Shown: positions 264-62,687 of the stretch, piece after piece
Layout: every line of letters begins with the position of its first letter
Numbering within the stretch: the stretch's first letter is position 1
Assembly: GCF_036588685.1 (NCBI RefSeq)
Contig: NC_086383.1
Coordinates: forward strand, 12,400,001 to 12,464,000
From: Mytilus trossulus
Taxonomy: Eukaryota
Length of the DNA stretch: 64,000 nucleotides
Direction: 5' to 3'
The notes under the pieces: generated by a model
What the model was told of the DNA's origin: nothing
The model's database searches: none
What the model saw: only the letters and a program-made list of their open reading frames with translations
Translations under genes and position numbers: made by a program

Positions 264-371
264 CTTCACATTGTTTTCCACTATATCCAGTTGGACAGGT
301 ACAAACAAAACTACTTCCGGTAGGAGTACATTCACCCCCATTCGAACAAGGCGAACTGTTGCATGGTGTGA
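264..371 (-). CDS. EGF exon (last visible in window)
   Basis: 108 nt, ag/gt boundaries, 6 Cys. Confidence 0.8.
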
Positions 372-19817: not shown

Positions 19818-20180
19818 AAAACTCTCATATATGTCAGAGTAACAAGAAGTCCATATTTTCATTCCGATATAATAATAATCTTGTTCCAATTTCGTTTCGT
19901 TTGGTTATTGTCCAAACTAGTAAATCTTTCAAAAGTTTGATTATGTTCCTTTGAACAATGCCTTTGTTCTATTCTTCCCCTGGTCGTGTTTTAAAAGTAT
20001 TGTAAGATTTTTTAACGGTTTGCAAGATATCATAATTGTTTTTCGATTTTACCAAGTCCTCTGGTAGTACAAGTTCATACCTTTGGTTTTCATAGAAAAT
20101 TGGTTTTGGTGAGCAAGTCTTTCCATCAAGATGAACAAGTTTTGTCCATCAAGGTTAGAACATGATTTGGCAATCATATA
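19818..20180 (-). pseudogene. Third, truncated and frameshifted copy of receptor exon 1
   Basis: MIAKSCSNLDG start and YDIL/IYES motifs are recognisable; an internal duplication shifts the frame; no TM segment follows. Confidence 0.75.
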
Positions 20181-24605: not shown

Positions 24606-24859
24606 TTACGTAGAAAAGAATAAAGATTTAGAATATACTAACGGTCTTTCGCATATGAAGCGATAATCAAATGAACATTTGTCATCATTCCATTCATTAT
24701 CTAACTCGTCATCAATGGTCAGACAGTTTTCGTTTCCATCTTGATTATTTGGTTCGTGTACAGTACGTGTATGCCAATCAGTTACTGTAAACCTTTGTCC
24801 ACTAGTTGTCCATAACCACACACCTTCATTTGCCTGATCTGATCCACCTAGCCAAAAAG
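24606..24859 (-). CDS. C-type lectin domain exon 3 (terminal)
   Basis: FWLGGSD...EPN...ENC...WNDDKC...FICE; polypyrimidine-cag acceptor at 24860. Confidence 0.9.
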
Positions 24860-27800
24860 CTGAAAAAAATGAATAGTTAGTAATCAAAAGTACCAGGATT
24901 ATAATTGATAAACAACGTGTTATTCAAGAAAAAACTTTTTATTAAAAGTCATATACAACATATCCAAATTAAACTGCACGCCTCAAATACGTCAAACACC
25001 ATTATTTTCCAAAAGTATACACATTGAAGAGATTCAACATGGTCAAAAGTGATATATGTCAGGGGATTTTTAAAATTGCTGTTAGTGATTTTCCTCATTT
25101 TCCACATTTCATTCTGGTTGACCTACTTTGAAGAACATATTATTTTGAATTTATTTGTAATTTGTATGTACATCATATCTTAAATATTGTCAAATGAGTG
25201 TTGAAGAAAACTAAGAATCAGTCAATTTAAACTTAAATCCACCACTAGGCTTAAATGTAGGTCAAATATTTTTTTATCTTTTTAACATATTTTCAGTCAG
25301 AAATAAGTATGACATATGATCAGCATAAACACCAATACTGCAACCTGATTTCGATTCAAATAACGCTTAAGATTTCAATCAATTATCAATCACTCGAAAT
25401 TGTTTGAAAAATAGATCGAAACTAATGTAACTTGTTTATAAAATTGAGACTAAATATTTACTGTGAGTCTAAATATACCATGTGATATTAAGATGAGATT
25501 GAGTCTTCGAAATAAGTAGTATTTGATGATAATTGATCTGTTTGAAAAACAATTCTGATGTTTTGAAATCTCACTGACCATCGGAAACAAAAAAGATTTG
25601 TATTTTGTTGGGCAGGGATGTTAGAATGTAGAGTCCCATGGTCAGTGAGTTTTCACACGATTGATCGTTCTCTGTATTGTTTCTATAATATTATGTTCCA
25701 CATATTGTAAGTAGAATTTAGAGAATAAAAATAGAAACGTTTGTTTTTATATGGGCTGAGGCTACGTAGAAAGTGTGAGCTAACTTTCTTTGACCCGGCT
25801 ATGTTTTTACACTGGCGGTTGCGATTGATGGTATCTATATAATTTGTATGAGTCTGTATGATTAATGCGACGTTTGTTACAAAGTTGGAAAGGACGTGTT
25901 ATAAGTACATTCTAGTTGTTTGTGTTAGCTTTCACTTCCTCTCCCTCCTTCTAGTAGTAGTTTTGTACGCTTGATACTTATGTAATTATATAACATGTTG
26001 ACATTGATACATATGTTTGATCTTTATTGGATTTTTTTATACTTTCATTATATAAAATGTATTCGATCTTTCGCACAACCTCGTTTGTTGTTTAATTTAG
26101 CTAGTTTAGAAAGTATTTATTTTAGTACGAATGAAATGAGGCACATGTAGAAAATAACATACTTTTGGTAGATCTACTTGATAAATTTATTTATTTCCAT
26201 GTAGATTCATGTTTCAATTTATTTATCAAAGTTGCTCAACTCACACCATTATACGATCGCAAACTAACAGTTCAAAATTAGGTGCCCAAAAAGACCAATA
26301 TCGGCATTTTTTTTGTTTCCAGAGTATAACTTGTGGAACGGTGAATGGATTTCTCTCTAATTTTGTAATAAATAAATATCTAAAAACTGCAATTTTCCAA
26401 TGGTAGGTACATACTTTTTCCATATCTATTGGCGTTTGTCCTAAGAAATGTCATCTCACTTGTTGTTGTTACTTCTGCAAGCATACTACTACGCTGTTGA
26501 CAATAAGACTGGAAAGTAAAATTGGTATAAATTTAAACCGCGATAATGGTTAATAACTGTTTAATTCATTGCATTCAGTAGCAAAAAATAAACCTGGTTT
26601 TTACAGGGGGAAAAATGATAATAACATTTGCCTCGTTTAATGATTTCTTGATTGACAAAATATTTGTTACGTTCGGAGGACGTGTTTTTCAACAGACTGT
26701 CGGCATTCCAATGGGCAAAAAACTGTGCCCCTTTAATTGGCGACTAGTTTCTTTATTATTATGAGGCTGACTCCATGCAAGCACTTCTTAGGAAGAAAGA
26801 TAAGAAGTTAGCAATATCCTGTAACTCTATTTTCCTCTATATAGATGATGTTCTTTCACTAAACAATTCAAAATTTGATGACTATGTGGAACGCATCTAC
26901 TAGGATACGAGAGATACAGTTAATTCGGCTTCATATCTTGACTTACATCTAGGAATTGACAATGAGGGTCGGTTGAAAACAAAACTTTACGACAAAAGGG
27001 ATGAGTTCAGCTTCCCAACTGTGAACTTTCCATTTCTAGGTAGCAACATTCAAGCAGTAAATGCATACAGGGTATATATCTTCCAAATGATACGATATTC
27101 CCGTGCTTGCATTTCCTATTATGATTTTCTTGATAGAGGGTTGCTACTCAAAAGGATGCTATTAAACCAAGAGTTCGAAATGGTAAAGTTTAAATCATCC
27201 CTTCGTATATTTTACGTACGCCATCACGAGTTGGTTGACCGTTATGGAATAAGCGTTTCACAAATGATATCGGATATGTTCCTTACGTCGTAACTACAAT
27301 CCTCTTCCCTTTCATGAAGGTGACCTACTGAATTAGACTATTTACCGGATTTGTAATCACATAAGCAACACGACGGCTGCCACATGTTGAGCAGGATCTG
27401 CTTACGCTTCCGGAGCACCTGAGATCACCCCTAGTTTTTGGTGGGGTTCGTGTTGTTTATTCTTTAGTTTTCCATTTTGTGTCATGTGTACTATTGTTTT
27501 TCTGTTTGTCTTTTTCATTTTTAGCCATGGCGTTGTCAGTTTGTTTTAGATTTATGAGTTTGACTGTCCCTTTGGTATCTTTCGTCCTTCTTTTAATGAC
27601 GTTTCTTTTCATCGAATCAACATTTTGAAGATTTGCATCGTCCTTCCATCTTTTTATAAAGATATGGACCTACCATTAAAAAGTGTCAAATATAGCTGAG
27701 AAAAATTCAGGGTGTTCATAAACACACGAAGACTGCAGTTTACTGCGTTTGTACACCACACTTCGGCTGAAGGGATTCTAAGCAAAGCTATTAGCCTGCT

Positions 27801-30800
27801 TATATTCGAATGCGTTATTATTTTGTTATGTGCAATATAATAGAACATTAGTATTTTATCAAATTCTGTGAAAAGAATATAGATAAACAAGATAATTAAT
27901 TTCTTTATATTGGAATTTAATTAACAAGATACATGTTCTCTTGTCGTTTCGTTTAATATTTGAACAGAACTTGTGGACACAATTGTGTTCAAACCATCTT
28001 ACTTTACGACATCAGCCTGTTGAGAATGGTTATATTATATACAAGGTAAGTTGAATCTTTAAAAAACAATGTATTAATTCTTTTAAAAAAGTTATGAAAA
28101 CAGAGATAGAGGATGATAAGGTGAAAATGTCCAATTAACGGATATTGTATCATATAATTCTTCAACGGTAAATAACTTTTTTTTCTACAACCGTATGCAT
28201 TTAAACCAGTTTCGACCAGTTAATTATATTTTGATAAACCATACGTTGATTTTGGACAGTAACATTTTTTTTTATATCAAAGAAAAAGTAAATTACATCT
28301 GCTTTATCGTGTTGGTAATAAAAGTAATCGACTCTCAATGGTAAAAGAGAGACGAACGATACACAAGGGACAGTCAAACTCGAAAATAAACTGACAACGT
28401 CATGGCTAACAATAAAAAGGACAAACAGTAAAACAATAGTACACATGACACACCATAGAAAACTACAGAATAAACAACATGAACCCACCAAAAACTAGGG
28501 TGATCACAGGTGCTCCGGAAGAGTAAGCAGATCCTGCTCGTCGTGTTGCTTATGAGATAACAAATCCGGTAAAAAGTCTAAATCGGTAGGTCACATTTAT
28601 TAAAGGGAAGGAGATTGTAGTTACGACGTAAGGAGCATATCCGATATCATATGTGAATTGGTTATTCCATAACGGTCAACCAACTCGTGATGACGTCCGT
28701 AAAATTAACGAAGAGATGATTTTAACTTCACCATTTAGAACTCTTGATTTAATAGCTTCCTTGTGAGCAACAACCTTCTATCAAGAAAATCATGATATAA
28801 AATGCAAGCACGGGAATACCGTATCAATAGGGAGATATATACACCGTATGCATGTTGTAATGATATTGTAATTATTATGTTTATTTATGTTGGCCTAATT
28901 TATGTTGTATGGCCTGATAGTTGTTTACCAAATAATCTTGTAACTGTGCAGTTTAGGAATCACTGGAACAATCACAGAATGATTAGAACTTTCTAGAATG
29001 ATCCTTATAAAAGATGCGTAATTTAAACTTCTACATTATTCCAGAAACTTCCGTTGTAACTTTCCAGGATTTTCCACAATGTTCCGTTCTAGCGTGTTCT
29101 AGAATAATCCGTCACAACTATATATATACAGACACTAAAGTTAAACTCTCATAATTAAACTTGGACATAGACATTGATAGACATTAGTATTCACAGCATT
29201 TGGATTGACACTTTTATTCTACAAACAACATCATACTGGATTGTTACCTTAGTAGTGAACATAATATTCAGATTGGATTCCGAAAGATTTCCGGATACAG
29301 ATAAAGATAAAAGATTGGACTCATATTTGACAGTTAAGTTGACAGTTATATTTGTGTAAAACTTCTTGTAAACTTTTGTATAATAAATATTGTTAAATTT
29401 TACTATTTATTTGTGTCTTTTGTTGGCTACAATTTAAAGGCGATTTCTGGCCGTAACAGAAATTGGGGGCTCGTCCGGGAGACTGAACATATTTTATTCA
29501 AAATTTGTTTAATATTTTTATTATAACTAGCCAACAAAATTCTACAAAATGGCATTTGATGCTGGTAAATTTTTGAAAACGCCAGACCTGGAGAGTTTTG
29601 ATAATTTAAAGAAAGAGGAATTAGTGTTGCTTGCTAAACAACTGAAATTAGCTTTTAAAGTATCTATGAGAAAACAAATTATAAAAAATTTGGTTATAGA
29701 CAAACTAGTTGACGCAGAAATTTTAGGTGAAGAGGCTCTTGAACTTAAGGTCGAAAATGTTGACGCCTTTAAATTAAAACAGCTTGAATTAGAACATGAA
29801 CTTAGATTAAAAGAACTGGAAATGAAGGAAAGATTGGAAATGGATAAACAAGAAAAAGAAAAAGAAGATGAATTCAAATTAAAACAAGATGAACTTAAAT
29901 TAAAACAGGCAGAACTTGAAATGAGGGAAAGGCTAGAGATGGAAAAACTGAAAATTGAAATGGTCAAAGAAGAAAGCAACACTAAAGTCCAGCCAAAATC
30001 AGATTATTTTGATGCAGCAAAAAATATACGTTTGGTACCAAAATTTTGTGAAAAAACAGTCGACAAATATTTTTCACAGTTTGAGAAAATTGCTAATAAT
30101 TTGAAATGGCCAATGCCGTATTGGACTACGATGCTGCAAAGTGTTTTTGAGGGTAAGGCAGCTGAAATATACTCCGCACTTCCATCAGAAAAAAGTTCTG
30201 ATTATGACACTGTGAAACAGGAAGTTTTGAAAGCCTATGAGCTAGTACCAGAAGCATATAGACAGAAATTTAGATCTTATAAAAAGTTTGATTCGCAAAC
30301 CTATGTGGAATTTGCTCGGGAAAAAGAAGATCTATTTGATAAATGGCTTACTTCAAAGAAAACAAATAACAATTTTGATCACCTAAGACAATTGATGTTA
30401 TTAGAAGAGTTCAAACAATGTGTTCATTCAGAATTAAAAACACATTTAGACGACAAAACTGTTGAGTCAATACATGATGCAGCTGTTATATCAGATAATT
30501 ATACTCTTTCACACAAAAGAAGTTTCAAGGGTCAAAATTATAATACTTCCAGTGGAAATTACAAAAATCAAAGCACTGAGCGTACTGATAGTAAGCCTGT
30601 TGCACAGAATAAGAGTCAGTCCAGTTATAATATGTCTAGTCAAAAATTTGATACTTTTGAGAAGAAGTCACTGATTTGTGCTTATTGTAAGAAGAATGGT
30701 CACCTGATGGCTGATTGTTTTAGACTCCAGAAGAAGAATGAACGAGATAATAAGCCAAAGACCAGTGCTTGTACGACACCTTATATTACCAGTACATTGG

Positions 30801-33800
30801 AATGTCCTGCGCGTCAGGCTTTTAAGTCCAGTTTTTGTGATTACATGGAGGAATATAAACCCTTTATGTCTGATGGGTTTGTTTCTATTGTTGATGATAC
30901 CACTCTTCAGCCTATTAAGATTTTACGGGACACTGGAGCTTCTCAGTCTTTATTGTTAGAAGGTGTGTTGCCTTTGTCTGAGAAGACTTCTGTTGGTGTC
31001 TCCGTTTTGTTACAAGGTGTAGAGTTAGGTTGTATAGATGTTCCTCTCCATCGAATTTATCTGAAGTCAGATTTGGTAACTGGACCAGTTGTTGTAGGTG
31101 TTCGTCCTAATCTCCCTGTTGAGGGTGTTACATTATTGCTAGGAAATGATCTAGCTAGGAACAAAGTGGTTGCTGAACCAATTGTTAGCAGTGAACCGGT
31201 GGTGGATGCCAAATCACCTGAAGATGATGCTGAATTGTATCCAGCTTGTGTTGTTACTAGGGCGATGGCTAGAAAACAACAAGATGATAATTTGAAAGAA
31301 GACAAATTTGATTACATGGACCTTTCTGACACTTTTATAGCTGATATTGCAGATCCTAGTAAATCAGAAAAGGCCATTATAAAACCACCTAGTGTTAACA
31401 AGAATGTTATTATGCCATGGCCAGACGTTAACAGCCATTCATTAGACCGAAAGAATTTATCTGAAGAACAACATAAAGACCCTGAGGTTCTCCAGCTCAG
31501 CCTGAGAGCTCAACCACAGGACGAAGCAGACAAAGTGGCCGAATGCTATTACCATCAGGACGGCATTTTAATGAGGAAGTGGAGGCCTCCTGATGCTACC
31601 CCAGAGGAGGAATGGAGAGTGGTGTACCAAGTGGTGGTGCCTAAAGTTTATAGGCAAGAAATTATTGGTCTTGCCCATGACACCCCCTTGGCTGGACACT
31701 TAGGTATCAGGAAGACTAGCCTTAAGATCTTGCAGCATTTCTACTGGCCTAAACTTAGAAATGATGTTGCAGAATACTGCAAATCATGTCATATATGCCA
31801 GGTTGTTGGTAAACCTAACCAGAAAATACCACCAGCACCACTTCTGCCTATTCCAGCCTTTGAGGAACCTTTCAGCAGAGTTCTAATAGACTGTGTTGGA
31901 CCTTTACCAAAGACCAAGACTGGAAATGCATATTTATTGACAATCATGTGTACATCTACCCGCTTTCCTGAAGCTATTCCGCTCAGAAATATCAAGACAC
32001 CTACTATCGTCAAAGCTTTGATCAAATTTTTCACATTAGTAGGACTTCCTAAGTCTATACAGTCCGACCAGGGATCAAATTTCATGTCAGGTTTATTTCA
32101 GCAAGTCGTGTACCAGTTAGGGATTGCTCAGTACAGATCAAGTGCTTACCATCCAGAATCTCAAGGTGCCTTAGAACGTTTTCATCAAACATTGAAGAAC
32201 ATGATTAGAACTTTTTGTCTTCAATTTGACAGAGACTTGGATGATGGAGTTCATTTTCTACTTTTTGCGGTCCGAGAGGCTGTTCAAGAATCCCTTGGAT
32301 TTAGTCCCTTTGAATTGGTATTTGGTCATACTGTAAGAGGACCGTTAAAATTGATTAAGGAAAAGTGGCTTACTGAACATACTGACTTGAATCTTTTAGA
32401 CTATGTATCTAGATTTAAAGAAAAACTGTATACTGCTTGTCAAATTGCTCAGAAAAACTTGAAAAATGTACAAAACAAGATGAAAATATGGTATGATAAA
32501 GATGCCAGGGACAGAGTTTTTGAGCCTGGTGATAAGGTACTTGTGTTTTTGCCAGTCCCTGGACATCCTTTACAGGCTAAATATTGTGGTCCTTATACAA
32601 TAGAGAGTAAAATTAATGATTTGAATTATATTGTAAAAACTCCAGGTCGGCGCAAACAAAATAGAGTGTGTCATATTAATATGTTAAAACCATATTTTGA
32701 GCGTACTAATGTACTATGTGATAGTAAACCAGTTGCCACTTTAGGCATGGTTAAATTTGAGAACAATCATGACAAACCAGATGTAATTGAACCAACTTTT
32801 AGTTGTAAATCTATGGAAGAGACAGTTAGATTGAAAAATTCAGAAATTTTGTCAAATTTAGATTCAAAACTTGCACATCTGTCTTTTGATCGTAGAGAAG
32901 AAATAAAAACTTTTGTATTTTCTTTTAAAAATCTTTTTCCAGATGTGCCAAACAAAACCACTGCTGTTTGTCATGATGTTGATGTCGGAGATGCTTCTCC
33001 AATTAAGCAACATCCTTACAGGCTCAATCCACTCAAACTTGAAGTTATGAGAAAAGAAATTAAATATATGCTTGACAATAATATTATTGAGCCGAGTAAC
33101 AGTGAATGGAGCTCTCCTTGTCTCCTTGTGCCAAAACCAGATAAAACCTTTCGTTTCGTGACTGATTTCAGAAAAGTAAATTTAGTCTCAAAATCTGATT
33201 CCTATCCGATTCCAAGGATAGACGATTGTATTGACAATATTGGTCAAGCAAAATTTGTGAGCAAATTTGATTTATTGAAAGGTTATTGGCAAGTACCATT
33301 GACACAGAGAGCTCGTGAAATATCAGCTTTTGTTACACCAGATGGCTTATTTCAATATACTGTAATGCCGTTTGGCATGAAAAGTGCTCCAGCTACATTT
33401 CAAAGAATGATCAATAATGTTATAAAAGATTTAGACTGTTGTTATGCTTATATTGATGATCTTATTGTATGTAGTGATAGCTGGGAACAGCATTTAACAC
33501 ATTTGTATAATACTTTTGATAGATTGTCAAAATCAAATTTGACTGTTAATCTTGGTAAAAGTGAATTTTGTCAGGCCACTGTTGATTATTTAGGGCATAC
33601 AGTTGGCCAAGGTCAAGTAAAACCTATAATGGCTAAAGTGGAAGCTATTTCCAAATTTCCTCCTCCTACAAATAGAAAACAACTTATGAGATATTTAGGC
33701 ATGATTGGATTTTACAGGAAATTTTGTTCAAATTTTGCTACTGTTGTTCAACCATTGACTCATCTTTTACGAAAAGACTCTAAATTTATCTGGAGTGAAA

Positions 33801-36800: not shown

Positions 36801-39800
36801 AATCTGCCATAGATTTGAGGTGCTTGGCGTTTGTAACGTCACATTTGCCATAGATTAGGAATCTGCCATAGATTTGGAACCCGCCAAAGATTTGAGTCTT
36901 ACATTTATATTTTAAGTTTCACAATAGATCCGGGACAAACAAAATTGTCAAACTTCAATTTATTACTTGTTGTTCTTAATCGTATGATTAATGAAAAGTT
37001 TGCCATTATCATAGACAAATAGTACGACAATTACGGAATCGTTGGAAATTTTAAGAGTGAATTAATATATGTTGATTATCAATCTATAGCATGCATGTTA
37101 TGTTCAATAAATCTTTTCTGGCTTTCCTTCCAATTTTTGATACTATAGAGTCATAACTTTGTTAACTGTTGCCTCTAAGTAAGGTTTATTGTTTTGAATT
37201 ATTGTAGAATTGTAAATACTAAAAGTAATTAAATTTTTTAAACCTTGGCATTATTCCAATTTGCGCTCGCAATGCTGCTAAAAAAATAACAACTATTTTC
37301 ATTCATCTTCCAACCAGAGGGACATGAAGGTCGACCTGTAAAAAAATGATCAACTAAGAATAAAGAAAGAAAACAAACGAGATTATCAACGGATTGAAAT
37401 AAGAGGAAGTCTTTATCAACAAAATGAGTCCACTAACAACAAATATCAGATGATATTCTAAGTATGAATAAGCTTATCAAGAACGGTGAAATCTTCATTA
37501 ATGTAACCGTATTTAGAAGAAAAACCAGACAGATATCACAAAGCTACTTTGTGTTAAACGCAATGATTTCGTTATACTCTATGTTAGTAAATTTATTTGT
37601 GGTCATTTGTGGAACGTTGTTAGGTTCAATATTTCACCAGAGCATATCAGATCTTTGATTCGTTTGATTAAGATTTTGTACTCTTTCGGGACAAAAAAGG
37701 CTAGCGGCCTATCATAAAAAAAAGTGTTGTATCCACATAGCATGTTTTAAACGCCCTTGCAGTAAAGCTACACATTTTTTTTAATGCTTGTGTGAATTTT
37801 GTTCCATCATGAATTAAATAAAAACTTCTGTCGATTAATATAGTAATCAAATATTTCAACGAAACAAACTTTGACATCGGTTTCCACTGTATCCAGTTGA
37901 ACAGGAACAAACAAAACTACTTGTAGTTGGTGTGCACCTTCCCCCATTCAAGCAAGGTGAACTATGGCATGGTGTGACTACAATATTAAATAACAGAATT
38001 TAGGTGCAAGGATTATATAAAGATATTAATATAGATTTGAAGTGTTGCTACCTTTACTTTTTGATAAATTTTTACACAGTATATCAAATAATTATGCAGT
38101 TTTCTGATAGACATTCCTAAGTAGTGTAAACTTCCCTAGCATGTAAACATAACGATTGTCACACAACTAGTTTTTGTTATTAAAAAATATGTTGTTATCA
38201 CTGTAATGAAAGTTGTTGTAGTATTTATTTGTTTTACAATTTTTGTTTAAAGAAGTTTATATTTTTCTGACTTTTGTCGATTTTCGTTTGGTATTTCCGC
38301 CTGAGTATCCTGGTTTCTTTCTTCGTTTGGTTAATCATTTATAAATGTCTTTCACATGAAACTTATTAATAGTTCAGCATTTACGTACCGCTTGTAACTT
38401 CTTCCGATTGTTGTTTAAGAAACTAATGAAATGATTTTTTTATTAACAAAAACAAACTGTATGTATTATGCCATAATAAATTTGATAAACCTCAAATTTA
38501 ACCTATATAATAATCATACACACTTTGACATTGTTTTCCATTATATCCAGTTGGACAGAAACAAACAAAACTACTACCAGTGGGCTTGCATGTTCCCCTA
38601 TTTAAACAAGGTGAACTGTGGCATGGCGTTCCTAAAAAAATAGAATAATATCATTGGAGTGCAATCATTAGATTAAAATCCTAGAATATATTGTTATTAG
38701 ATGTGTTGGTTGCTTGACTTCTTAGCACCTTTTGAAAAGAAACAATTTTAAAGAAATATTTGCAGTGACCATGTTCTAAGGTCGACACACCAAGGTATAT
38801 TACGTCATGGTTTCCTCGAGAAAAATATGTACTTTTCATTTTGATATATACATTATATGATCAATATACAAGAATGTACTTTTTATGATGCAAACTTCTC
38901 TCTTAATGCCTATTAACTTTAATAAAAAAAAAATGAAATCTGTATTTTTCAATCCGATTGCAATGATGATCTTGATATACATGTAAATTTAAACGTAATC
39001 CACCTTGACATTGGCTTCCAAAGTATCCAGTTGGACAGGAACAAACAAAACTACTTCCGGTTGGTGTACATTCTCCCCCATTCGAACAAGGTGAACTGTG
39101 GCATGGTGTTACTAAGAAAAGAAAAGAAAATTATTTGAGTTCAATCAATGTCCATTGAATTATCTAGATAAGAATTTCTACCACATTGACTGTAATTTTC
39201 AAATTGTTGATATGAACAAGCTATTAGCGCAAGTGATAATTTCCTGTATGTTTTTCGTCATCACGACATTATCAGTAAAACAAATCAATGACAATATTTC
39301 CAAGTTTGCAGTGAGAAAAAAAATGGCGATAATGTAAGTCTTTACATTTAGCAGTCCACGTTTAACTCACATCATGCTAAAGTGGATACAAATGATTTTA
39401 ATTGTTTTATTTTCATACATATAAAACTATTACATCGACTTGTCAAAAATCCCCAGTTCGTCTTACGTAATAACTTGGTGAAATATTCTTTCTACAACGA
39501 TTTTTTTTCTGTTTTATTATGTTTTCAAATTCTGCTTTTTAACGATTTTTTTTCTTTTGGCCTATGTTTTCTTTCAATAGTCATCTTCCGTGTGCGAAAA
39601 AACAATATGCTGTTCTGATGTACCCCCATTTGAATTCTTCTTTTTTTAATACTTATACGAGTCACACTTTATCTATGTAAATCAAGGCTGCTTCTTTTAG
39701 TTTTTAATTTACAATTATTCATTTGAGGTAGCTGAGGTTTCTTCCTCCAACTTGGAATTTGAAAAAGCAGAGGCAATCGGTCTAGATTTTTAATAAAATG

Positions 39801-42800
39801 TGCGATTGTCGAGAGTACTATGTTACTGTAAACCAACTAAATTTCGCGTGCGATTTATTTTGGCGACTTTCGCGAGTAGAAAAATAACGCGAAATTAAAT
39901 CATCGCGAAAAGGAATAACTTGGATCTTTCCCTATCAAACTACATTAAGTAATTAAGAAAATCGCGAAATTAAATCGCCGCGAAGTTGACTAGCTGGGTA
40001 TAAACGCGAAATTAAGTACCCGCGAAAATAAGTTGGTTTACAGTATTCATATGTTAGACATGCCAGGTTGATATAAAACAGTGTGTGTTTTATCCTATCT
40101 ACAGCTGTATTTTACCAAAAAAAGAAAGTTTTTGTTTCTTTCAGTCTGACAATAGCTATTTTTATATATTGACCCAAGTCTCAATAGATCTATGGTTGGG
40201 TTGTTGTCTCTCTGACACATTTCCCATTTCCAATCTCAATTTTAAATTTCTTTTCTATCGATATTGGATATTATCGAACCAAATACTTAAATGTTACACT
40301 TCTTGTAAAATCAATAAACCATAAGTTTGTCGAACGTTATATTTATCTGTGTTGTTTGTGACCCTGACTTTTGCCATATGGATTCCAATCTCACATAGGA
40401 TCTTTCCTTTTCATTTTGACATTATCATTACAGGTTTCATAAATGTTTCTATATGCATTTAGATGTTTATCAAGAGAACGAAATTTAAACACCTGGACAA
40501 CCAGACCTCCAGCCATTAAACAAAGGGAGAAATTCGTCGATTATCTACTAACAAAGTTACTAACCTTCACATCTGGATCCATTGTATCCATCAGTACAAA
40601 CACAGATAGTTAAATTCCTAAGTTCATTGCAAGTTCCATTGTAGAAGCAAGGTTCTCTAGAACACGGTGTTTCTAAAATCAAAAACTGAATTATAATCCT
40701 GGTTACTATTTTACACCACTGGGTCGATGCCACTGCTGGTGGACATTTCGTCCCCGAGGGTATTACCAGCCCAGTAGTCAACACGTCGGTGTTGACATGA
40801 GTATCAATAATGTGGTCATTTTATACAAATGTCCTGTTTACAAAACTTTGAATTTTCGAAAAATTAAGGATTTTCTTATCCTAGGCATAGATTACCGTAG
40901 CCATATTTGGCACAACTTTTTTGGAATTTTGGATTCTAAATGCTCTTCAACTTTTTACTTGTTTGGCTTAATAAATATTTTGATATGAGCGTCACTGATG
41001 AGTCTTATGTAGACGAAAAGCGCGTCTGGTGTACTAACTATTTTATCACGAAATAACTGAATGATATTTTTTCAGGGGCACGGTAGTATTTCCTGGGCCA
41101 TAAGGGATAATGATAGCCTTTTTAGAATTTTAATCACTGTCGAACATTGCAAAAAAAATCTACATCAACATAAAATTTTAGTACTTTCATTATACTATTC
41201 ATGAATGAATTTGAATATGTATCATGACCGTTTTTTTTTTAATCTTCAAAATCCTAAGGCCACTTGTGCTTTAAGGTCTTTTATCATGCAGTGAATACAA
41301 ATTTGAAAAATTGTAATAATTCATTTTCACCCGTATGTTAAATTATTTCATATTTTTCTACACCTGATTACTCAGTTTTCTGGAAAGTATGTTCAGTTGA
41401 TACTGTATTTTTTGTCCAATCACACTGTTCAGTTACCTTGAATTAATTAGGGTACACATAAGAGCAACTTGTAATCAGGAATGCAAACACTACCATGCTA
41501 CCTTCAATTCAATTCATAGCATTCGTAATAATAATATTTACGTTATATTTTCCGTACTAAATACGAAGAACCGTTATTATTTCGGAAAATGTTTCAATTA
41601 CCTTAGGGTAATCAATCAACACTGTTTGTGTTTTATTTAGTTAAATATATGCTTAGTTTTCATGGTTCAAATAAGATTTATATTTTTCGAACAAAACTTC
41701 CAAAGCATGTTTTCTTAGATTCTATAAATCATGATATTTCGTTGCTGGACAAAAAATAATGCAAAAGTTATACACTTTTTCAAAATTAATATTTTTTACT
41801 GTTTTTTCGTCACAGAAACTATCTGAGTCAAAGAATGTTGTATGCTCTACAAGGAAGAAGAAAAGTATTGCGTGCCAGCTTATGAAATAGTTATTTACAC
41901 GTTAGATTTTCTGCGTTTGCAATTCGGATAAAGTTTATCACTATGTTTCCTACTTAAAAGAACATTTAAAGGAGGGGTGAAAGATTCAAAAGGGACAGTC
42001 AATTTAACAAGATTAGGGCAACACTAGAATATTTAAAAGTTATAGATGTATAGAGAGAAAACGAATCCGGGAACAAACTTAAACCGATGGAAACATTACA
42101 ACTATTAGAGTAAAATATCGTTACAACAGAAACATTGAAGTGCCAAAAAACTATAACATAAACGACAAAAACGATATACATAGAAACGGAGTATTTGATA
42201 ACTACGCCACACATAAAGATGTATTTTTATAATGTATATAAAGTCTTGAAATTTATACAATTGTTTGAAACGAGATCGTTAATTTAAAATTTATTTTCAC
42301 AATACTTCTCCAAATAATTATCATCAGAATGAATGTATTGAAAGGCCATTTTAAAATAATGCTGTGACGACTTCATCATTATTTAGACTAATACAATACT
42401 CTATTTATTGAAAAAAAAATTGACTGTAGTGACTAATAAGACATCTGTGAAACATACAGAAAATATATAATTGAAACCACAAACGATAAGACAAAACACA
42501 ATATCAAACCCAACCCACAATAGAAACATCGTTTCTAAAAACAAAAATATTAATATATAAGTCACTGATAGTAGTATACAGACATTTCCTAAATTCATGT
42601 TGATATATTAATTAGATAATTTGTTAACATTACATACTTAAAAACAAAAATATATATTACTATATGATTATGCAAGTAGATGAAAAGAAATCAGTAGCAG
42701 TGTGTTAAAATGTAAAATAAATTCTGCACTAAAGAAACGTTTAGCTATAGTTATAGTTTACATGTTTAATAACAATGTAGATGTATGTGTTTTAATTTCA

Positions 42801-44453
42801 ATTACTCTCGGGTTTTTTTTTAATTCACTTTCTACGTATCGCGCACGCATACATCATTTAAAGTTAACTTGACACAGTGTTCATAAGGGTTTCAAAAATA
42901 GTCTCGGCTAAATGGTGGTTCAAGGTATAAACAAGGAAAGAAATTATAACAAACCAATCACAAATATATGTTAATAAGCAAATCATTAATTTAAAAGAAT
43001 CATTTCCACGAAACCCATAGTTGATTAAAATGCTAGTTTTATACCACATGTTTGTGAATTTTATAGTCAACAAGTCGCCCCGTCCATAATTAAAAAATTT
43101 TGTAACAATGTACATTAGAAAACACTACTTCATCCTTTTGAATGATTTTATCAAATATGTCAATCGTTGTTAACCATAATTTACGTTTAAAACAACCATA
43201 ACAACAGGATACACTTTAGTTTTCCTAGAATTGACAAAGCGATGGATGTAAAAAAAAAAAGTCAATTTATCTTTCGGCTGTATTTATGGTTCATGATTAA
43301 ATCCTGTATTTTGTTAAACATTAAGATTCGTGATTTGTCTTCCGAGCCAATGTAGTGATACAGCTATAAGTATATGGTTATATCACTGTATACTTTATAT
43401 AAGGAGAGACATTTATTTATTCTGTACAATATAAATACAATTAAGTCACCGGTAGTTTGTCTATTTATATTATATTGTAAAACTATATATATATATATAT
43501 AATTCAAGTAGAAATCGTTCTGCTCAGAAAGACTTAATTTTGTTTAATTGTGTAATAAATAATGTAAAATTTGAGAAACATGAAATCAGAACATTGTGTT
43601 CGGAAGACGTATTTTACTGCCGACTGTATATTGTGAATAGTTACTTCAAAGAGTTTTAGGGTGTATAAAAAGAAAACGAATCAGTATAGATTGAGCAATC
43701 AAGTAAATTTTATTTATTTTTAAGTAATGCAGTTTTTTTCTTTTAATTTATGATTTTTAAGGAAGACTTATTTCTAATTGTAATGCCTTGTAAGAGTACA
43801 AAAGGGAGGTTATAGATGGTTATGGGAATACATTTCTCTAAAGATTTATAAAATATGAATGTAAGTAAAGAATGAGTAGAAAAAATATGTCATCAAAATC
43901 GATAAATACTTTGAGCCTGAGTATTTTGCTTTTCGTGATCCAGCGAGTTGTTTTTCAGTAACAAAAACACAGTCACTCCGGCTATGACAACCGCCAAAAG
44001 AACCGAAAATATAAAACAAGCCAAACATTTTCTTCGCCGGCCTTTGAAAGTAAAACGTTTGTTACAACATCTGGTCAAATGTGTTGAAGCACAATGAGTA
44101 GGGTTCAGTTCTTTGACATCTATATTCTCATATACATCAGAATTACAAGACGTCTGGGGTTGTATTTCTGTATAATAATCATCTTGTTCCACTTTCGCTG
44201 TCTTATTGTCCAAACTAGTAAATCTTTCAGAAGTTTGAATGAGCTCCTTTGTACAATCGCTTTGTTCTATTCGTCCCCTGGTGGTGTTTTTATAAGTGTT
44301 GTTCGCATTTTGATCGTTTTGCAAGATATCATAATTGCTCTTCGATATTACCAAGTTATCTGGCAACAAAGGTTCATACGTTTGGCTTTTATCAACAATT
44401 GTTTCTGATGAACAGATATTCCCATCGAGAATAGAGCATATTTTGGCCATCAT
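24606..44453 (-). CDS. Type II membrane receptor, copy 2: Tyr-motif tail, TM, 4 EGF, C-type lectin (EPN/WND), 471 aa
   Basis: Exons 44453-43910, 40672-40565, 39111-39004, 38631-38524, 37977-37870, 37335-37244, 26508-26415 and 24859-24606. All introns are GT-AG with compatible phases (1,1,1,1,1,0,1); total 1416 nt, open to TAA. Confidence 0.88.
26415..26508 (-). CDS. C-type lectin domain exon 2
   Basis: ttccag|SYCQQRSSMLAEVTTTSEMTFLRTNANRYGK|gtatgt; 94 nt, phase 0-1. Confidence 0.85.
26626..27594 (+). mobile_element. Penelope-like retroelement 3' fragment (RT/thumb plus 3' UTR), degenerate
   Basis: GIPMG..CAP, YIDD and KLYDKRDEFSFPTVNFPFL motifs with frameshifts; the same 3' tail recurs many times in the window. 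Confidence 0.8.
28856..29458 (+). repeat. 5' LTR
   Basis: TGTAAT...GTAACA; direct repeat of 34340-34942. Confidence 0.95.
29464..29480 (+). other. Primer binding site, tRNA-Pro type
   Basis: TGGGGGCTCGTCCGGGA, matching the known tRNA-Pro PBS, 5 nt after the LTR. Confidence 0.85.
29549..34255 (+). CDS. Gag-Pol polyprotein (capsid/SCAN-like, CCHC knuckle, protease, integrase, RT, RNase H)
   Basis: 1568 aa with motifs in this order: CAYCKKNGHLMADC, LRDTGA, HHCC plus DCVG/SDQG/ERF, YIDD, VDAS...TDH. Confidence 0.96.
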   Translation: MAFDAGKFLKTPDLESFDNLKKEELVLLAKQLKLAFKVSMRKQIIKNLVIDKLVDAEILGEEALELKVENVDAFKLKQLELEHELRLKELEMKERLEMDKQEKEKEDEFKLKQDELKLKQAELEMRERLEMEKLKIEMVKEESNTKVQPKSDYFDAAKNIRLVPKFCEKTVDKYFSQFEKIANNLKWPMPYWTTMLQSVFEGKAAEIYSALPSEKSSDYDTVKQEVLKAYELVPEAYRQKFRSYKKFDSQTYVEFAREKEDLFDKWLTSKKTNNNFDHLRQLMLLEEFKQCVHSELKTHLDDKTVESIHDAAVISDNYTLSHKRSFKGQNYNTSSGNYKNQSTERTDSKPVAQNKSQSSYNMSSQKFDTFEKKSLICAYCKKNGHLMADCFRLQKKNERDNKPKTSACTTPYITSTLECPARQAFKSSFCDYMEEYKPFMSDGFVSIVDDTTLQPIKILRDTGASQSLLLEGVLPLSEKTSVGVSVLLQGVELGCIDVPLHRIYLKSDLVTGPVVVGVRPNLPVEGVTLLLGNDLARNKVVAEPIVSSEPVVDAKSPEDDAELYPACVVTRAMARKQQDDNLKEDKFDYMDLSDTFIADIADPSKSEKAIIKPPSVNKNVIMPWPDVNSHSLDRKNLSEEQHKDPEVLQLSLRAQPQDEADKVAECYYHQDGILMRKWRPPDATPEEEWRVVYQVVVPKVYRQEIIGLAHDTPLAGHLGIRKTSLKILQHFYWPKLRNDVAEYCKSCHICQVVGKPNQKIPPAPLLPIPAFEEPFSRVLIDCVGPLPKTKTGNAYLLTIMCTSTRFPEAIPLRNIKTPTIVKALIKFFTLVGLPKSIQSDQGSNFMSGLFQQVVYQLGIAQYRSSAYHPESQGALERFHQTLKNMIRTFCLQFDRDLDDGVHFLLFAVREAVQESLGFSPFELVFGHTVRGPLKLIKEKWLTEHTDLNLLDYVSRFKEKLYTACQIAQKNLKNVQNKMKIWYDKDARDRVFEPGDKVLVFLPVPGHPLQAKYCGPYTIESKINDLNYIVKTPGRRKQNRVCHINMLKPYFERTNVLCDSKPVATLGMVKFENNHDKPDVIEPTFSCKSMEETVRLKNSEILSNLDSKLAHLSFDRREEIKTFVFSFKNLFPDVPNKTTAVCHDVDVGDASPIKQHPYRLNPLKLEVMRKEIKYMLDNNIIEPSNSEWSSPCLLVPKPDKTFRFVTDFRKVNLVSKSDSYPIPRIDDCIDNIGQAKFVSKFDLLKGYWQVPLTQRAREISAFVTPDGLFQYTVMPFGMKSAPATFQRMINNVIKDLDCCYAYIDDLIVCSDSWEQHLTHLYNTFDRLSKSNLTVNLGKSEFCQATVDYLGHTVGQGQVKPIMAKVEAISKFPPPTNRKQLMRYLGMIGFYRKFCSNFATVVQPLTHLLRKDSKFIWSENCQKAFENSKSLLINSPVLITPDFEKQFKLAVDASDVGIGAVLYQETDDNVEKPISYFSKKLDKHQKNYSTIEKECFAMLSALQHFDVYLNPTVYPILVYTDHNPLTFMHKMRNKNQRLTRWSLLLQEYDVIVKHIKGKDNVIADALSRAY
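34329..34339 (+). other. Polypurine tract
   Basis: AAGGGGGGAGG abutting the 3' LTR. Confidence 0.85.
34340..34942 (+). repeat. 3' LTR
   Basis: One mismatch to the 5' LTR seen by eye (29238 G vs 34722 A). Confidence 0.95.
35971..36904. mobile_element. Non-autonomous DNA transposon with long imperfect TIRs and subterminal AAATCTATGGC repeats
   Basis: ATGTAGGACTCAAATCTATGGTGGGTTCCAAATCTATGGCAGAT versus right-end reverse complement ATGTAAGACTCAAATCTTTGGCGGGTTCCAAATCTATGGCAGAT. Confidence 0.75.
37244..37335 (-). CDS. C-type lectin domain exon 1
   Basis: tttacag|RPSCPSGWKMNENSCYFFSSIASANWNNAK|gt; 92 nt, phase 1-0. Confidence 0.88.
37870..37977 (-). CDS. Copy 2 EGF exon 4
   Basis: [35 protein letters not shown], ag/gt boundaries. 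Confidence 0.85.
38524..38631 (-). CDS. Copy 2 EGF exon 3
   Basis: [35 protein letters not shown], ag/gt boundaries. Confidence 0.85.
39004..39111 (-). CDS. Copy 2 EGF exon 2
   Basis: [35 protein letters not shown], ag/gt boundaries. Confidence 0.85.
39826..40043. mobile_element. MITE with TA TSD (Tc1/mariner-type signature)
   Basis: TA|CTGTAAACCAACT...AGTTGGTTTACAG|TA; internal CGCGAAATTAA repeats. Confidence 0.85.
40565..40672 (-). CDS. Copy 2 EGF exon 1
   Basis: [35 protein letters not shown], ag/gt boundaries. Confidence 0.85.
40689..41037 (+). mobile_element. Retrozyme subfamily A near-monomer with hammerhead at 40989-41032
   Basis: Colinear with the 59542 element; one stem III substitution. 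Confidence 0.8.
43910..44453 (-). CDS. Copy 2 exon 1: tail (YEPL, YDIL, YTEI, YENI) plus TM
   Basis: RRRK precedes CLACFIFSVLLAVVIAGVTVFLLL; phase-1 donor A|gtattt. Confidence 0.88.
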
Positions 44454-53048: not shown

Positions 53049-53212
53049 TTTATAACACACTTTGACCGTTATACTTCCTTACCGAGGTCAATTATAAGCT
53101 ATTATAATAAACAAAACAATGTGATTACTGTAATAAATCTTGCGATCACAATATTTGCGCTTTGTTTTAGAGTAAATAATATTTGTCTTAATAGACAATT
53201 AATGAGTCACAA

Positions 53213-62589: not shown

Positions 62590-62687
62590 TATCAAAATAA
62601 ACTTTGACCGTTAATATACTTCCTTGTGTGCGTGTATTTATAGTCATTGACTTGGTGTATTTACCTTGTTGCAAAAAGTAGATTGGA

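What the first reader, a model, noticed from the sequence alone, without database searches (positions are those of the whole stretch)
24606..44453. Hidden type II receptor: Tyr-motif tail - TM - EGF stalk - EPN C-type lectin
Seen: eight minus-strand exons with canonical splice sites and matching phases join into a 471-aa ORF. It has no signal peptide, one TM preceded by RRRK, four EGFs and a long-form 6-Cys CTLD with EPN, E and WND. Known: EPN with WND marks Ca-dependent mannose/glucose/GlcNAc/fucose binding. Type II signalling lectins (DC-SIGN, Dectin) use helical or short necks, while the CTLD+EGF proteins I know (selectins, thrombomodulin family) are type I. Inference: a lineage-specific pattern-recognition receptor with an inverted, selectin-like layout that I cannot match to a characterised family.
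Basis: partly seen in the sequence, partly recalled or inferred. Interest (0 to 1): 0.85.

Follow-up and report, generated by a model that had tools for sequence, protein, structure and literature searches.

The report
Mussel type II EGF-stalk C-type lectin receptor
The eight exons form an intact mussel (Mytilus) gene for a membrane sugar-binding receptor with a tyrosine-motif tail, an EGF stalk and a C-type lectin head; it belongs to a Mytilus-only tandem gene family that databases hold only as misnamed, unstudied predictions.

Summary
Eight minus-strand exons (44453-24606), all with AG/GT sites and matching phases, sum to 1416 nt (471 codons plus stop). They encode a 142-aa tail, one TM helix after RRRK, four EGF domains (Pfam E 6e-6 to 6e-10) and a long-form six-Cys CTLD with EPN, E and WND.

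The genome is Mytilus trossulus. The gene lies in a 230-kb tandem cluster. At least five paralogs keep the same order (tail/TM, EGFs, CTLD) on one strand, with 3 to 22 EGF exons.

Public Mytilus proteins show the same layout, for example M. edulis XP_071144267.1, auto-named "Notch-like". A truncated M. edulis model is 86% identical to this tail. No relative of the tail was found outside Mytilus, and I found no paper describing the architecture.

The tail/TM exon always ends in phase 1. It is also joined to TSP1 and thyroglobulin ectodomains. Its four Yxx[L/I] sites are conserved across five species.

Most likely this is a Ca-dependent glycan receptor that signals or internalises through the tyrosine motifs. 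That function is inferred.

The scan had already noted the same kind on two paralogs (s1-830148; s1-820756 and s1-820869). I rate it a new variant of a known kind, of moderate interest.

The parts
43910..44453 (-). Exon 1: start codon, 142-aa cytoplasmic tail, TM helix and short juxtamembrane linker; ends in phase 1 (donor GT at 43909-43908)
   Evidence: It has paralogs with open frames at 47-60% identity and is 86% identical to M. edulis P0026.
44367..44378 (-). YEPL (aa 26-29), first Yxx[L/I] site
   Evidence: The Tyr is invariant in 5 paralogs and kept in at least 85% of 14 Mytilus tails.
44322..44333 (-). YDIL (aa 41-44), 11 residues after YEPL; together they form ITAM-like pair 1
44163..44174 (-). 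YTEI (aa 94-97), preceded by the acidic QDD
   Evidence: The YY.E.Q block is conserved in at least 85% of tails.
44121..44132 (-). YENI (aa 108-111), 10 residues after YTEI; together they form ITAM-like pair 2
   Evidence: This Tyr is invariant.
43956..44039 (-). RRRK basic cluster (44039-44028) followed by the TM helix, aa 143-166 (44027-43956)
   Evidence: Kyte-Doolittle 19-residue maximum 2.96. In the AF2 model of relative P0003 the only helix in this region lies over the TM segment, at low confidence.
40565..40672 (-). Exon 2: EGF 1 (108 nt, phase 1-1)
   Evidence: Pfam EGF E 6.2e-6; AG/GT flanks
39004..39111 (-). Exon 3: EGF 2, carries the C-x-S-x-P-C motif
   Evidence: Pfam EGF E 1.4e-9
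38524..38631 (-). Exon 4: EGF 3
   Evidence: Pfam EGF E 5.5e-10
37870..37977 (-). Exon 5: EGF 4
   Evidence: Pfam EGF E 1.8e-8
37244..37335 (-). Exon 6: start of the CTLD with the long-form Cys pair (CPSGW...SCYFF); ends in phase 0
   Evidence: Paralog exons are 63-79% identical and lie in collinear positions.
26415..26508 (-). Exon 7: CTLD helix region (contains C1); ends in phase 1
24606..24859 (-). Exon 8: CTLD C-terminal two-thirds (WLGG, EPN 24755-24747, E 24731-24729, WND 24692-24684, three Cys) and the TAA stop
   Evidence: Pfam Lectin_C E 2.2e-10. The Ca/sugar-site residues align with langerin, codakine and mosGCTL-1.
28856..34639 (+). LTR retrotransposon nested in intron 6, antisense to the gene. 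It is not part of the gene but explains the 10.7-kb intron.
   Evidence: 300-nt LTR stretches are 100% identical. The 1568-aa ORF has integrase upstream of RT/RNase H.

Best explanation
This is an intact gene of Mytilus trossulus. It encodes a single-pass type II membrane protein, N-terminus inside the cell, in this order:
- a disordered cytoplasmic tail with four conserved Yxx[L/I] sites arranged as two ITAM-like pairs;
- a TM helix;
- a stalk of four Notch-type, non-Ca-binding EGF domains;
- a membrane-distal long-form C-type carbohydrate-recognition domain with a complete principal Ca2+/sugar site (EPN, E, WND).

It is one member of a Mytilus-specific, tandemly duplicated birth-and-death family. 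In that family the stalk length varies from 3 to 22 symmetric EGF exons. The tail/TM exon is a phase-1 cassette that is also spliced to other ectodomains.

Inferred mechanism: the CRD binds mannose/GlcNAc/fucose-type glycans in a Ca-dependent way on microbes or particles. Receptor clustering then leads to phosphorylation of the tail tyrosines, which recruit a Syk-type tandem-SH2 kinase, as reported for oyster transmembrane C-type lectins, and/or drive uptake.

Shown here: gene structure, domains, motifs, family structure and conservation. Inferred: topology (from sequence rules), sugar specificity, signalling and expression.
For: - Exon model with canonical sites and matching phases; Pfam EGF x4 and Lectin_C.
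- TM helix with positive-inside flank and no signal peptide.
- In-frame stop just upstream of a start codon that is conserved among paralogs.
- Collinear tail, EGF and CTLD exon sets in paralogs B, C, D, E and G on C11:12.22-12.44 Mb.
- Same layout in public proteins: M. edulis CAG2252097.1 (tail-TM-5 EGF-CTLD) and RefSeq XP_071144267.1.
- M. edulis counterpart of this very tail at 86% identity, with exon 1 joined to an EGF as in this model.
- The CRD of this gene and of family member P0003 is closest to langerin, codakine, mincle and DC-SIGN, with EPN/E/WND aligned.
- dN/dS of about 0.46 against intact paralogs, in both tail and CTLD.
- The four Tyr sites are kept in at least 85% of 14 tails from five Mytilus species and four ectodomain classes.
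- Shuffle test on the 142-aa tail: P = 0.003 for four or more Yxx[L/I]; P = 0.0009 for two ITAM-like pairs.
- Oyster CgCLec-TM1 and CgCLec-HTM signal through a YxxL tail to Syk, ERK and IL-17 (PMC13027682).
Against:
- The 471-aa product was not seen in the protein collection, so no independent gene model confirms all seven junctions for this copy.
- Neighbouring copies are decaying: a stop in the tail of C, a lost Cys and QPN in E, and a broken tail exon D2.
- dN/dS of 0.46-0.9 indicates only moderate constraint.
- The spacing between the YxxL/I sites (11 and 10 residues) is longer than the canonical ITAM 6-8.
- EPN does not strictly predict specificity in bivalves: GYL has EPN/WND but binds Gal-beta-1-4-GlcNAc (PMC12842671).
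- The AF2 model of relative P0003 was poor over the CTLD (mean pLDDT 48.7).
Confidence: 0.7

Rival explanations
1. The protein is the same, but the tyrosine motifs are YxxPhi sorting signals. The receptor would then be mainly endocytic or phagocytic, clearing glycoconjugates or microbes through AP-2, as ASGPR and DC-SIGN do, rather than signalling through Syk.
For: All four sites fit YxxPhi. The closest solved CRDs belong to endocytic receptors such as langerin, DC-SIGN, MGL and the mannose receptor family. The inter-tyrosine spacing of 10-11 residues is off the canonical ITAM.
Against: The paired arrangement is conserved across distant tails and is unlikely by chance. In paralog D1 the YEPL...YDxL unit is tandemly amplified about 6 times. 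Oyster transmembrane C-type lectins use YxxL tails to bind Syk. The two roles are not exclusive.
Confidence: 0.3
2. The protein is a non-immune adhesion or matrix receptor, for example for cell-cell or cell-matrix contact, byssus or shell formation, or gamete or larval recognition. In this reading the lectin head recognises self glycans.
For: EGF repeats of this type also occur in mussel foot proteins: a PVFP-5 chain is among the PDB hits and one related protein carries the automatic name 'Adhesive plaque matrix protein 2'. Lecticans use EGF-CTLD for matrix binding. No expression data were available.
Against: Tandem birth-and-death expansion, fast evolution, variation between EPN and QPN among copies, and a tail shared with TSP1-class receptors are typical of immune recognition families. 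Bivalve transmembrane CTLs studied so far are haemocyte immune receptors.
Confidence: 0.12
3. This copy is silent or dispensable: a recently duplicated or presence/absence-variable gene that is no longer used, even though its frame is still open.
For: Neighbouring copies are broken. A full-length young LTR element sits in intron 6. The product is absent from the protein collection. There are no RNA data.
Against: All eight exons are open with canonical splice sites. The Ca-site and Cys residues are all intact. dN/dS against intact paralogs is about 0.46, not 1. The M. edulis counterpart keeps the frame and all four Tyr motifs.
Confidence: 0.12
4. The model is mis-joined: exon 1 belongs to a different transcript, and the EGF-CTLD exons use another, unseen signal-peptide exon.
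For: Secreted relatives with signal peptide, coiled coil, EGF and CTLD exist in Mytilus (P0062-P0064). Junction 1-2 spans a 3.2-kb intron and was not confirmed by reads.
Against: The tail exon is followed by EGF and CTLD exons on the same strand in five further paralogs. Gene models from three other Mytilus species join this tail type directly to an EGF or to TSP1+EGF (P0003, P0013, P0015, P0016, P0026, P0061). The phase is 1 on both sides. No other EGF or leader-like exon was found between 45000 and 40672.
Confidence: 0.04

Closest known systems
Vertebrate group II type II C-type lectin receptors (DC-SIGN/CD209, langerin/CLEC4K, mincle, MGL, ASGPR)
   Same: N-terminal cytoplasmic tail with Tyr motifs, a single TM and a membrane-distal C-terminal CRD with EPN/WND. 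These are the best solved-structure matches by sequence: langerin E 4e-18 to family member P0003 and 1.4e-8 to exon 8.
   Different: Their neck is a coiled coil or short stalk that oligomerises the CRDs; here it is 4 (3-22 in paralogs) EGF domains. There is no orthology, since the family was found only in Mytilus. The tail carries two YxxL/I pairs rather than a hemITAM, an ITIM or an adaptor-binding charge in the TM.
Oyster transmembrane C-type lectins CgCLec-TM1 and CgCLec-HTM (also CgCLEC-TM2, CfLec-2)
   Same: They are bivalve membrane-bound CTLs. YxxL-type tails are reported to bind Syk and drive ERK and IL-17 (PMC13027682). CfLec-2 and CgCLEC-TM2 have an N-terminal TM (PMC12842671).
   Different: Those are single-domain CTLs without an EGF stalk. 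CgCLec-HTM has its TM at the C-terminus and QPS/WHD motifs, and CgCLEC-TM2 has EFG/FVN. The tails are unrelated: nothing outside Mytilus was found in the tail search.
Lectican G3 domain (aggrecan, versican, neurocan, brevican)
   Same: The N-to-C order is EGF then CTLD, which is why automatic pipelines name the Mytilus proteins 'neurocan' or 'versican core protein'.
   Different: Lecticans are secreted proteoglycans with a CCP after the CTLD and no TM or tail. Here there is no CCP and the protein is membrane-anchored at the N-terminus.
Selectins and the thrombomodulin/CD93 group (CTLD + EGF, type I)
   Same: They combine a CTLD with EGF domains on a single-pass membrane protein. They were the nearest large clusters in the ESM Atlas feature search (scores 0.79-0.80, leads only).
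   Different: They are type I, with the CTLD at the N-terminus followed by EGF and then the TM. Here polarity and domain order are reversed with respect to the chain. In both cases the CRD is the membrane-distal domain.
Draper/CED-1/MEGF10 phagocytic receptors and teneurins (from my own knowledge, not tested here)
   Same: Draper has an EGF-repeat ectodomain plus a tail ITAM with long spacing (YxxI-x11-YxxL) that recruits the Syk-like kinase Shark. Teneurins are type II proteins with EGF repeats.
   Different: Draper is type I and has no CTLD. The teneurin EGF model PF25024 scores below its cutoff on P0003 (56.8 vs 65 bits), and no other teneurin domain is present.

Membership tests
C-type lectin-like domain superfamily (Pfam PF00059), Ca-dependent CRD subtype | CTLD sequence signature: WIGL-type motif and four core Cys plus the two N-terminal long-form Cys | tested here: met
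   PF00059 E 2.2e-10 on exon 8 alone. Exons 6/7/8 hold 2+1+3 Cys and FWLGGSD. Family member P0003 scores E 3.8e-17 over the whole domain.
C-type lectin-like domain superfamily (Pfam PF00059), Ca-dependent CRD subtype | Principal Ca2+ site residues: E-P-N, a downstream E, and N-D of WND | tested here: met
   EPN, NENC and WND are present and align with langerin, codakine and mosGCTL-1.
C-type lectin-like domain superfamily (Pfam PF00059), Ca-dependent CRD subtype | Ca-dependent binding of mannose-type sugars | not testable with these tools
   This needs a recombinant CRD with a glycan array, with and without EDTA.
Type II (N-in) single-pass membrane receptor | No cleavable signal peptide, one TM, a positive-inside N-terminal flank, and disulfide-rich domains C-terminal to the TM | tested here: met
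   Hydropathy and flanks; in-frame stop upstream of the conserved start. This is a sequence rule only and was not tested experimentally.
Vertebrate group II CLRs (DC-SIGN/langerin/ASGPR) | Coiled-coil or heptad neck between the TM and the CRD | tested here: not met
   The neck consists of four EGF domains. A coiled-coil neck occurs only in the secreted Mytilus relatives P0062-P0064.
Selectins | Type I; N-terminal CTLD, then EGF, then CCP repeats, then TM | tested here: not met
   The order here is tail, TM, EGF x4, CTLD, and there is no CCP/Sushi match.
Lecticans (G3) | Secreted proteoglycan; EGF-EGF-CTLD-CCP at the C-terminus | tested here: not met
   The EGF-then-CTLD order is shared, but there is no CCP and there is an N-terminal TM.
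ITAM-bearing immunoreceptors | Cytoplasmic Yxx[L/I]-x(6-12)-Yxx[L/I] | tested here: met
   There are two pairs: YEPL-x11-YDIL and YTEI-x10-YENI. Shuffle P = 0.0009 and the sites are conserved across 14 tails. The spacing is longer than the canonical 6-8.
ITAM-bearing immunoreceptors | Tyr phosphorylation and binding of a Syk-family tandem SH2 domain | not testable with these tools
   There is only precedent, from oyster CTLs (PMC13027682).
Teneurins | Type II protein with the teneurin EGF block plus the YD-shell/Tox-GHH ectodomain | tested here: not met
   PF25024 scores 56.8 bits against a cutoff of 65 on P0003, and no other teneurin domains are found.

The most novel reading that the evidence does not exclude
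The conserved tail/TM exon is a portable phase-1 signalling cassette with two ITAM-like pairs in cis. Mytilus has shuffled it onto at least four ectodomain types: EGF-CTLD, TSP1-EGF-CTLD, TSP1 plus an SPRY-like domain, and thyroglobulin type-1 repeats. On this reading it defines a genus-specific immunoreceptor superfamily. Stalk length, through an 'accordion' of 3-22 symmetric EGF exons and predicted exon-skipping isoforms, and CRD motif (EPN versus QPN) would diversify recognition. This would be an invertebrate counterpart of vertebrate ITAM receptor families, built by exon shuffling.
Probability: 0.35. Interest if true: 0.7.

Novelty: new variant of a known kind. Interest (0 to 1): 0.5.

Why it matters
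Bivalves have very large C-type lectin repertoires, but only a few membrane-bound members have been studied, and none of those covered in the surveys I read has an EGF stalk.

This family offers a directly testable link in a lophotrochozoan between glycan recognition at the cell surface and tyrosine-based signalling or uptake. It also shows how exon shuffling can build receptor diversity: a phase-1 tail/TM cassette combined with phase 1-1 EGF exons.

On the practical side, these genes are mislabelled in public annotation as Notch, Delta, neurocan or versican homologues, and this copy seems to be missing from the protein sets.

Tried and rejected
- The look-up of encoding contigs for the M. edulis counterpart P0026 was closed. 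No cross-species DNA, and so no orthologue dN/dS, could be obtained.
All searches used single exons by reference or natural database proteins. As a result, no full-length look-up, fold or topology predictor was run on this gene's own product.
- AF2 on family member P0003 with a 13-sequence alignment gave mean pLDDT 48.7. The EGFs scored about 80, but the CTLD and tail were below 50. I judged the model too poor for a fold search and ran none.
- The ESM Atlas feature search gave only sub-0.9 leads: thrombomodulin, selectins and C1qR.
- Four literature searches found no description of a type II EGF-stalk CTL.
- Rejected: an upstream signal-peptide exon, because of the in-frame TAA and the absence of an acceptor before the ATG.
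- Rejected: extra or degenerate EGF exons in the introns.
- Rejected: teneurin, selectin or lectican membership (see the membership tests).
- Poly(A) signals (AATAAA 212 nt after the stop) and TATA-like hexamers were found, but they carry little weight in a 32% GC genome.


Full report
**1. Observation**

The window is AT-rich (about 32% GC). On the minus strand I re-derived the eight exons from stop-free segments and their flanks:
- ex1 44453-43910
- ex2 40672-40565
- ex3 39111-39004
- ex4 38631-38524
- ex5 37977-37870
- ex6 37335-37244
- ex7 26508-26415
- ex8 24859-24606

Every intron starts with GT and ends with a pyrimidine tract plus AG. The phases are 1 after ex1-ex5, 0 after ex6 and 1 after ex7, and they match across all junctions. 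The lengths sum to 1416 nt, i.e. 471 codons plus TAA.

Everything below rests on single exons given by reference, or on natural proteins from the databases.

**2. Domains**

Pfam, searched exon by exon:
- EGF (PF00008) in ex2-ex5, E 6e-6 to 6e-10.
- Lectin_C (PF00059) in ex8, E 2e-10, covering profile positions 42-107. The missing N-terminal third of the domain lies in ex6 and ex7.

Exons 6, 7 and 8 carry 2+1+3 cysteines, the long form, and an FWLGGSD motif.

Exon 8 aligns with mosGCTL-1, langerin and the clam lectin codakine (E 3e-11 to 3e-8). EPN, the glutamate of NENC and WND fall on the Ca/sugar-site columns.

Exon 1 has one strongly hydrophobic stretch, aa 143-166 (Kyte-Doolittle 2.96). 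It is preceded by KGRRRK and followed by a mildly charged linker. The first 30 residues are not hydrophobic.

EGFs 2-4 carry C-x-S-x-P-C, and EGFs 1 and 3 carry C-x4-[ST]-C. From general knowledge these are the Notch-type O-glucose and O-fucose consensus sites. None of the EGFs has a Ca-binding N-terminus.

**3. Is exon 1 the true first coding exon?**

An in-frame TAA lies three codons upstream of the first ATG, and there is no AG between them. The start (MMAK/MAK) and about 170 nt of 5' flank are conserved among paralogs. An upstream coding exon therefore cannot feed this frame.

A tblastn sweep found no further EGF-like or leader-like exon between 48000 and 20000. The next upstream genes (51-62 kb, minus strand) are RING/B-box/NHL TRIM-like ORFs.

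**4. Organism and family**

The window is G000:C11:12400001-12464000 of a 1.30-Gb genome. Contig C11 is 71,253,669 bp. That is the contig length recorded for Mytilus trossulus XP_063406856.1, and that protein's EGF peptides are identical to those of neighbouring gene A. The genome is therefore M. trossulus.

The tail/TM exon has about ten relatives on C11:12.22-12.44 Mb and two to three on C7:30.20-30.21 Mb. CTLD exons 6 and 8 have their closest relatives in the same C11 interval.

Combining these hits gives collinear, same-strand sets of tail, EGF exons, ex6, ex7 and ex8 for the following genes:

| Gene | EGF exons | CRD motif | Notes |
|---|---|---|---|
| B | 6 | EPN | intact |
| C | 3 | QPN | stop in the tail |
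| D | 5 | EPN | two tail exons; one is broken, the other has about six tandem copies of the YEPL...YDxL unit in a 645-aa open frame |
| E | 4 | QPN | one long-form Cys lost |
| G | 22 | EPN | the neighbour inside this window |
| H | 4 | EPN | this gene, intact |

Gene A (XP_063406856.1) has the same EGF-CTLD ectodomain behind a different tail and TM.

All EGF exons are 108 nt, except one of 105 nt in gene D. All are flanked by AG/GT and keep phase 1-1.

Pairwise NG86 dN/dS for H against the intact copies G and B is about 0.46 in both tail and CTLD exon 8, and about 0.3 in exon 6. Pairs involving the degenerating copy E approach 1. This is a birth-and-death family under moderate constraint.

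**5. Independent gene models**

A full HMMER scan of 1.84 billion representatives with exon 1 returned only 12 proteins.
- Eleven have E <= 1e-10. The six that carry a species label are all Mytilus, two more are in clusters or alignments with Mytilus proteins, and three come from Logan assemblies with no species label.
- The 12th hit (E 5e-4) looks unrelated.

Models with the same layout:
- M. edulis CAG2252097.1 (442 aa): tail, TM, five EGF, CTLD.
- M. edulis RefSeq XP_071144267.1 (466 aa) and isoform X2 (394 aa): the same layout, differing by exactly two EGFs.
- M. galloprovincialis and M. coruscus also have such models. One M. coruscus model has a TSP1 domain inserted before the EGFs.

M. 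edulis P0026 (260 aa, a truncated model) is 86% identical to H's exon 1 over 180 aa. It keeps all four tyrosine motifs and joins the tail directly to the first EGF, as in this model.

H's own product did not appear in three searches of the 5.8-billion-protein collection, although gene A's did. This suggests, but does not prove, that H is unannotated.

Automatic names in the family are 'neurogenic locus Notch protein-like', 'Delta-like', 'fibropellin', 'neurocan' and 'versican'.

**6. The tail is a shared cassette**

The same tail/TM module precedes several other ectodomains:
- two thyroglobulin type-1 repeats (M. coruscus CAC5394270.1);
- a TSP1 domain plus a roughly 210-aa C-terminal domain (M. 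coruscus CAC5385899.1; M. californianus LOC127708035). The C-terminal domain looks SPRY-like in the Atlas, which is a lead only.

Two TSP1-class genes lie on C7:30.19-30.21 Mb of this genome.

In H, B, D1, G, E and both C7 genes the tail exon ends one base into a codon, directly before GT. It is therefore a phase-1 cassette compatible with phase 1-1 EGF exons.

In an alignment of 14 tails from five species and four ectodomain classes, the >=85% consensus retains MAK, TY(EPL), YD.L.N.Q, YY.E.Q...S..S..YE, RGK and the TM core.

In H, four of six tail tyrosines are Yxx[L/I], and they form two Yxx[L/I]-x10/11-Yxx[L/I] pairs. Shuffling the 142-aa tail reaches these counts with P = 0.003 and P = 0.0009.

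**7. Mechanism (inferred)**

Disulfide-rich EGF and CTLD domains must face outward, and the positive-inside rule places the N-terminus in the cytoplasm. This is a type II receptor with the CRD held away from the membrane on an EGF stalk.

A complete EPN/E/WND site predicts Ca-dependent binding of sugars with equatorial 3- and 4-OH groups (mannose, GlcNAc, glucose, fucose). The related clam lectin codakine behaves this way. The rule is looser in bivalves, however (PMC12842671).

For the tail, the best-supported reading is tyrosine-based signalling. Oyster CgCLec-TM1 and CgCLec-HTM bind Syk through YxxL tails and drive ERK and IL-17 (PMC13027682). The amplified YEPL...YDxL unit in paralog D also suggests a functional module.

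YxxPhi-mediated endocytosis is a serious and not exclusive alternative.

**8. Comparison with known families**

The CRD is closest to vertebrate group II receptors (langerin, DC-SIGN, mincle), but the neck is made of EGFs rather than a coiled coil.

The EGF-then-CTLD order recalls lectican G3, but there is no CCP and the protein is membrane-anchored. Selectins and the thrombomodulin group are type I, with the CTLD first.

Bivalve transmembrane CTLs described so far are single-domain. Two bivalve CTL surveys do not mention EGF at all. Four literature searches found no description of this layout.

Mytilus also has secreted relatives with signal peptide, coiled coil, EGF and CTLD, and a WSC-CTLD form with a CRD of this type. 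The EGF-CTLD unit is therefore itself shuffled.

**9. Limits**
- There is no transcript evidence.
- The AF2 model of P0003 was confident only for the EGFs, and I made no fold search.
- Searches for the layout outside Mytilus were limited to close relatives. A distant family with the same architecture cannot be excluded.

**10. Verdict**

This is a real-looking, intact member of a Mytilus-specific family of type II EGF-stalk C-type lectin receptors with a conserved double-YxxL/I tail cassette. It is a new variant of a known kind, of moderate interest. The scan had already flagged the same kind on paralogs G (s1-820756, s1-820869) and E (s1-830148).

Noticed in passing
window 28856-34639 (+), inside intron 6: A full-length LTR retrotransposon lies antisense to the gene. 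Its 300-nt LTR stretches are 100% identical and it has one open 1568-aa gag-pol frame. The integrase (aa 697-1049) lies upstream of RT (1194-1352) and RNase H, the unusual Gmr1-like order for a gypsy-type RT, and gag contains a SCAN-like capsid domain. It looks like a very young insertion. I only observed it.
   Followed up: partly
window 264-16988 (-), continuing to G000:C11:12389399: Neighbouring paralog G has the same tail/TM exon (16476-16988), 22 intact 108-nt EGF exons, many in near-identical alternating pairs, and CTLD exons beyond the window start (ex6 at 12392557, ex7 at 12390103, ex8 at 12389399). The predicted product is about 1100 aa.
   Followed up: partly
G000:C11:12272786-12274603 (L005): Paralog D has a 645-aa open first exon in which the YEPL...YDxL unit of the tail (aa 1-85) is tandemly repeated about six times before the normal tail and TM. 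M. edulis CAG2209620.1 shows the same repeats in a mis-fused model.
   Followed up: partly
G000:C7:30192359-30211483 (-): Two genes use the same tail/TM cassette with a TSP1 domain and a roughly 210-aa C-terminal domain that has many copies in the genome. The ESM Atlas places that domain next to SPRY domains (0.92-0.95, a lead only). A thyroglobulin type-1 version exists in M. coruscus.
   Followed up: partly
window 19895-20130 (-): Two short fragments resemble the N-terminal part of the tail (aa 9-57 and 45-87; E 7e-6 and 2.5e-5). One of them contains stops. They lie between genes G and H and could be a relic or an alternative first exon.
   Followed up: no
window 51227-53060, 56549-57715, 60646-62595 (-): Long ORFs with RING, B-box and NHL matches, i.e. 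TRIM-NHL-like genes, lie upstream of the lectin gene.
   Followed up: partly
window 26729-27375 vs 28539-28853 and 34943-35281: There are inverted repeats of 118-315 nt at 84-88% complementarity around the LTR element. Reverse-transcriptase-like ORF fragments (YIDD-type) lie on opposite strands at 26615-27293 (+) and 34877-35298 (-). This looks like an older retroelement, arranged head to head.
   Followed up: no
G000:C11:12205001-12214500 (gene A = XP_063406856.1): The cluster's edge gene has the same EGF-CTLD ectodomain (EPN/WND) but an unrelated cytoplasmic tail and TM. This points to a swap of the first exon within the cluster. RefSeq names it 'neurogenic locus notch homolog protein 3-like'.
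   Followed up: partly
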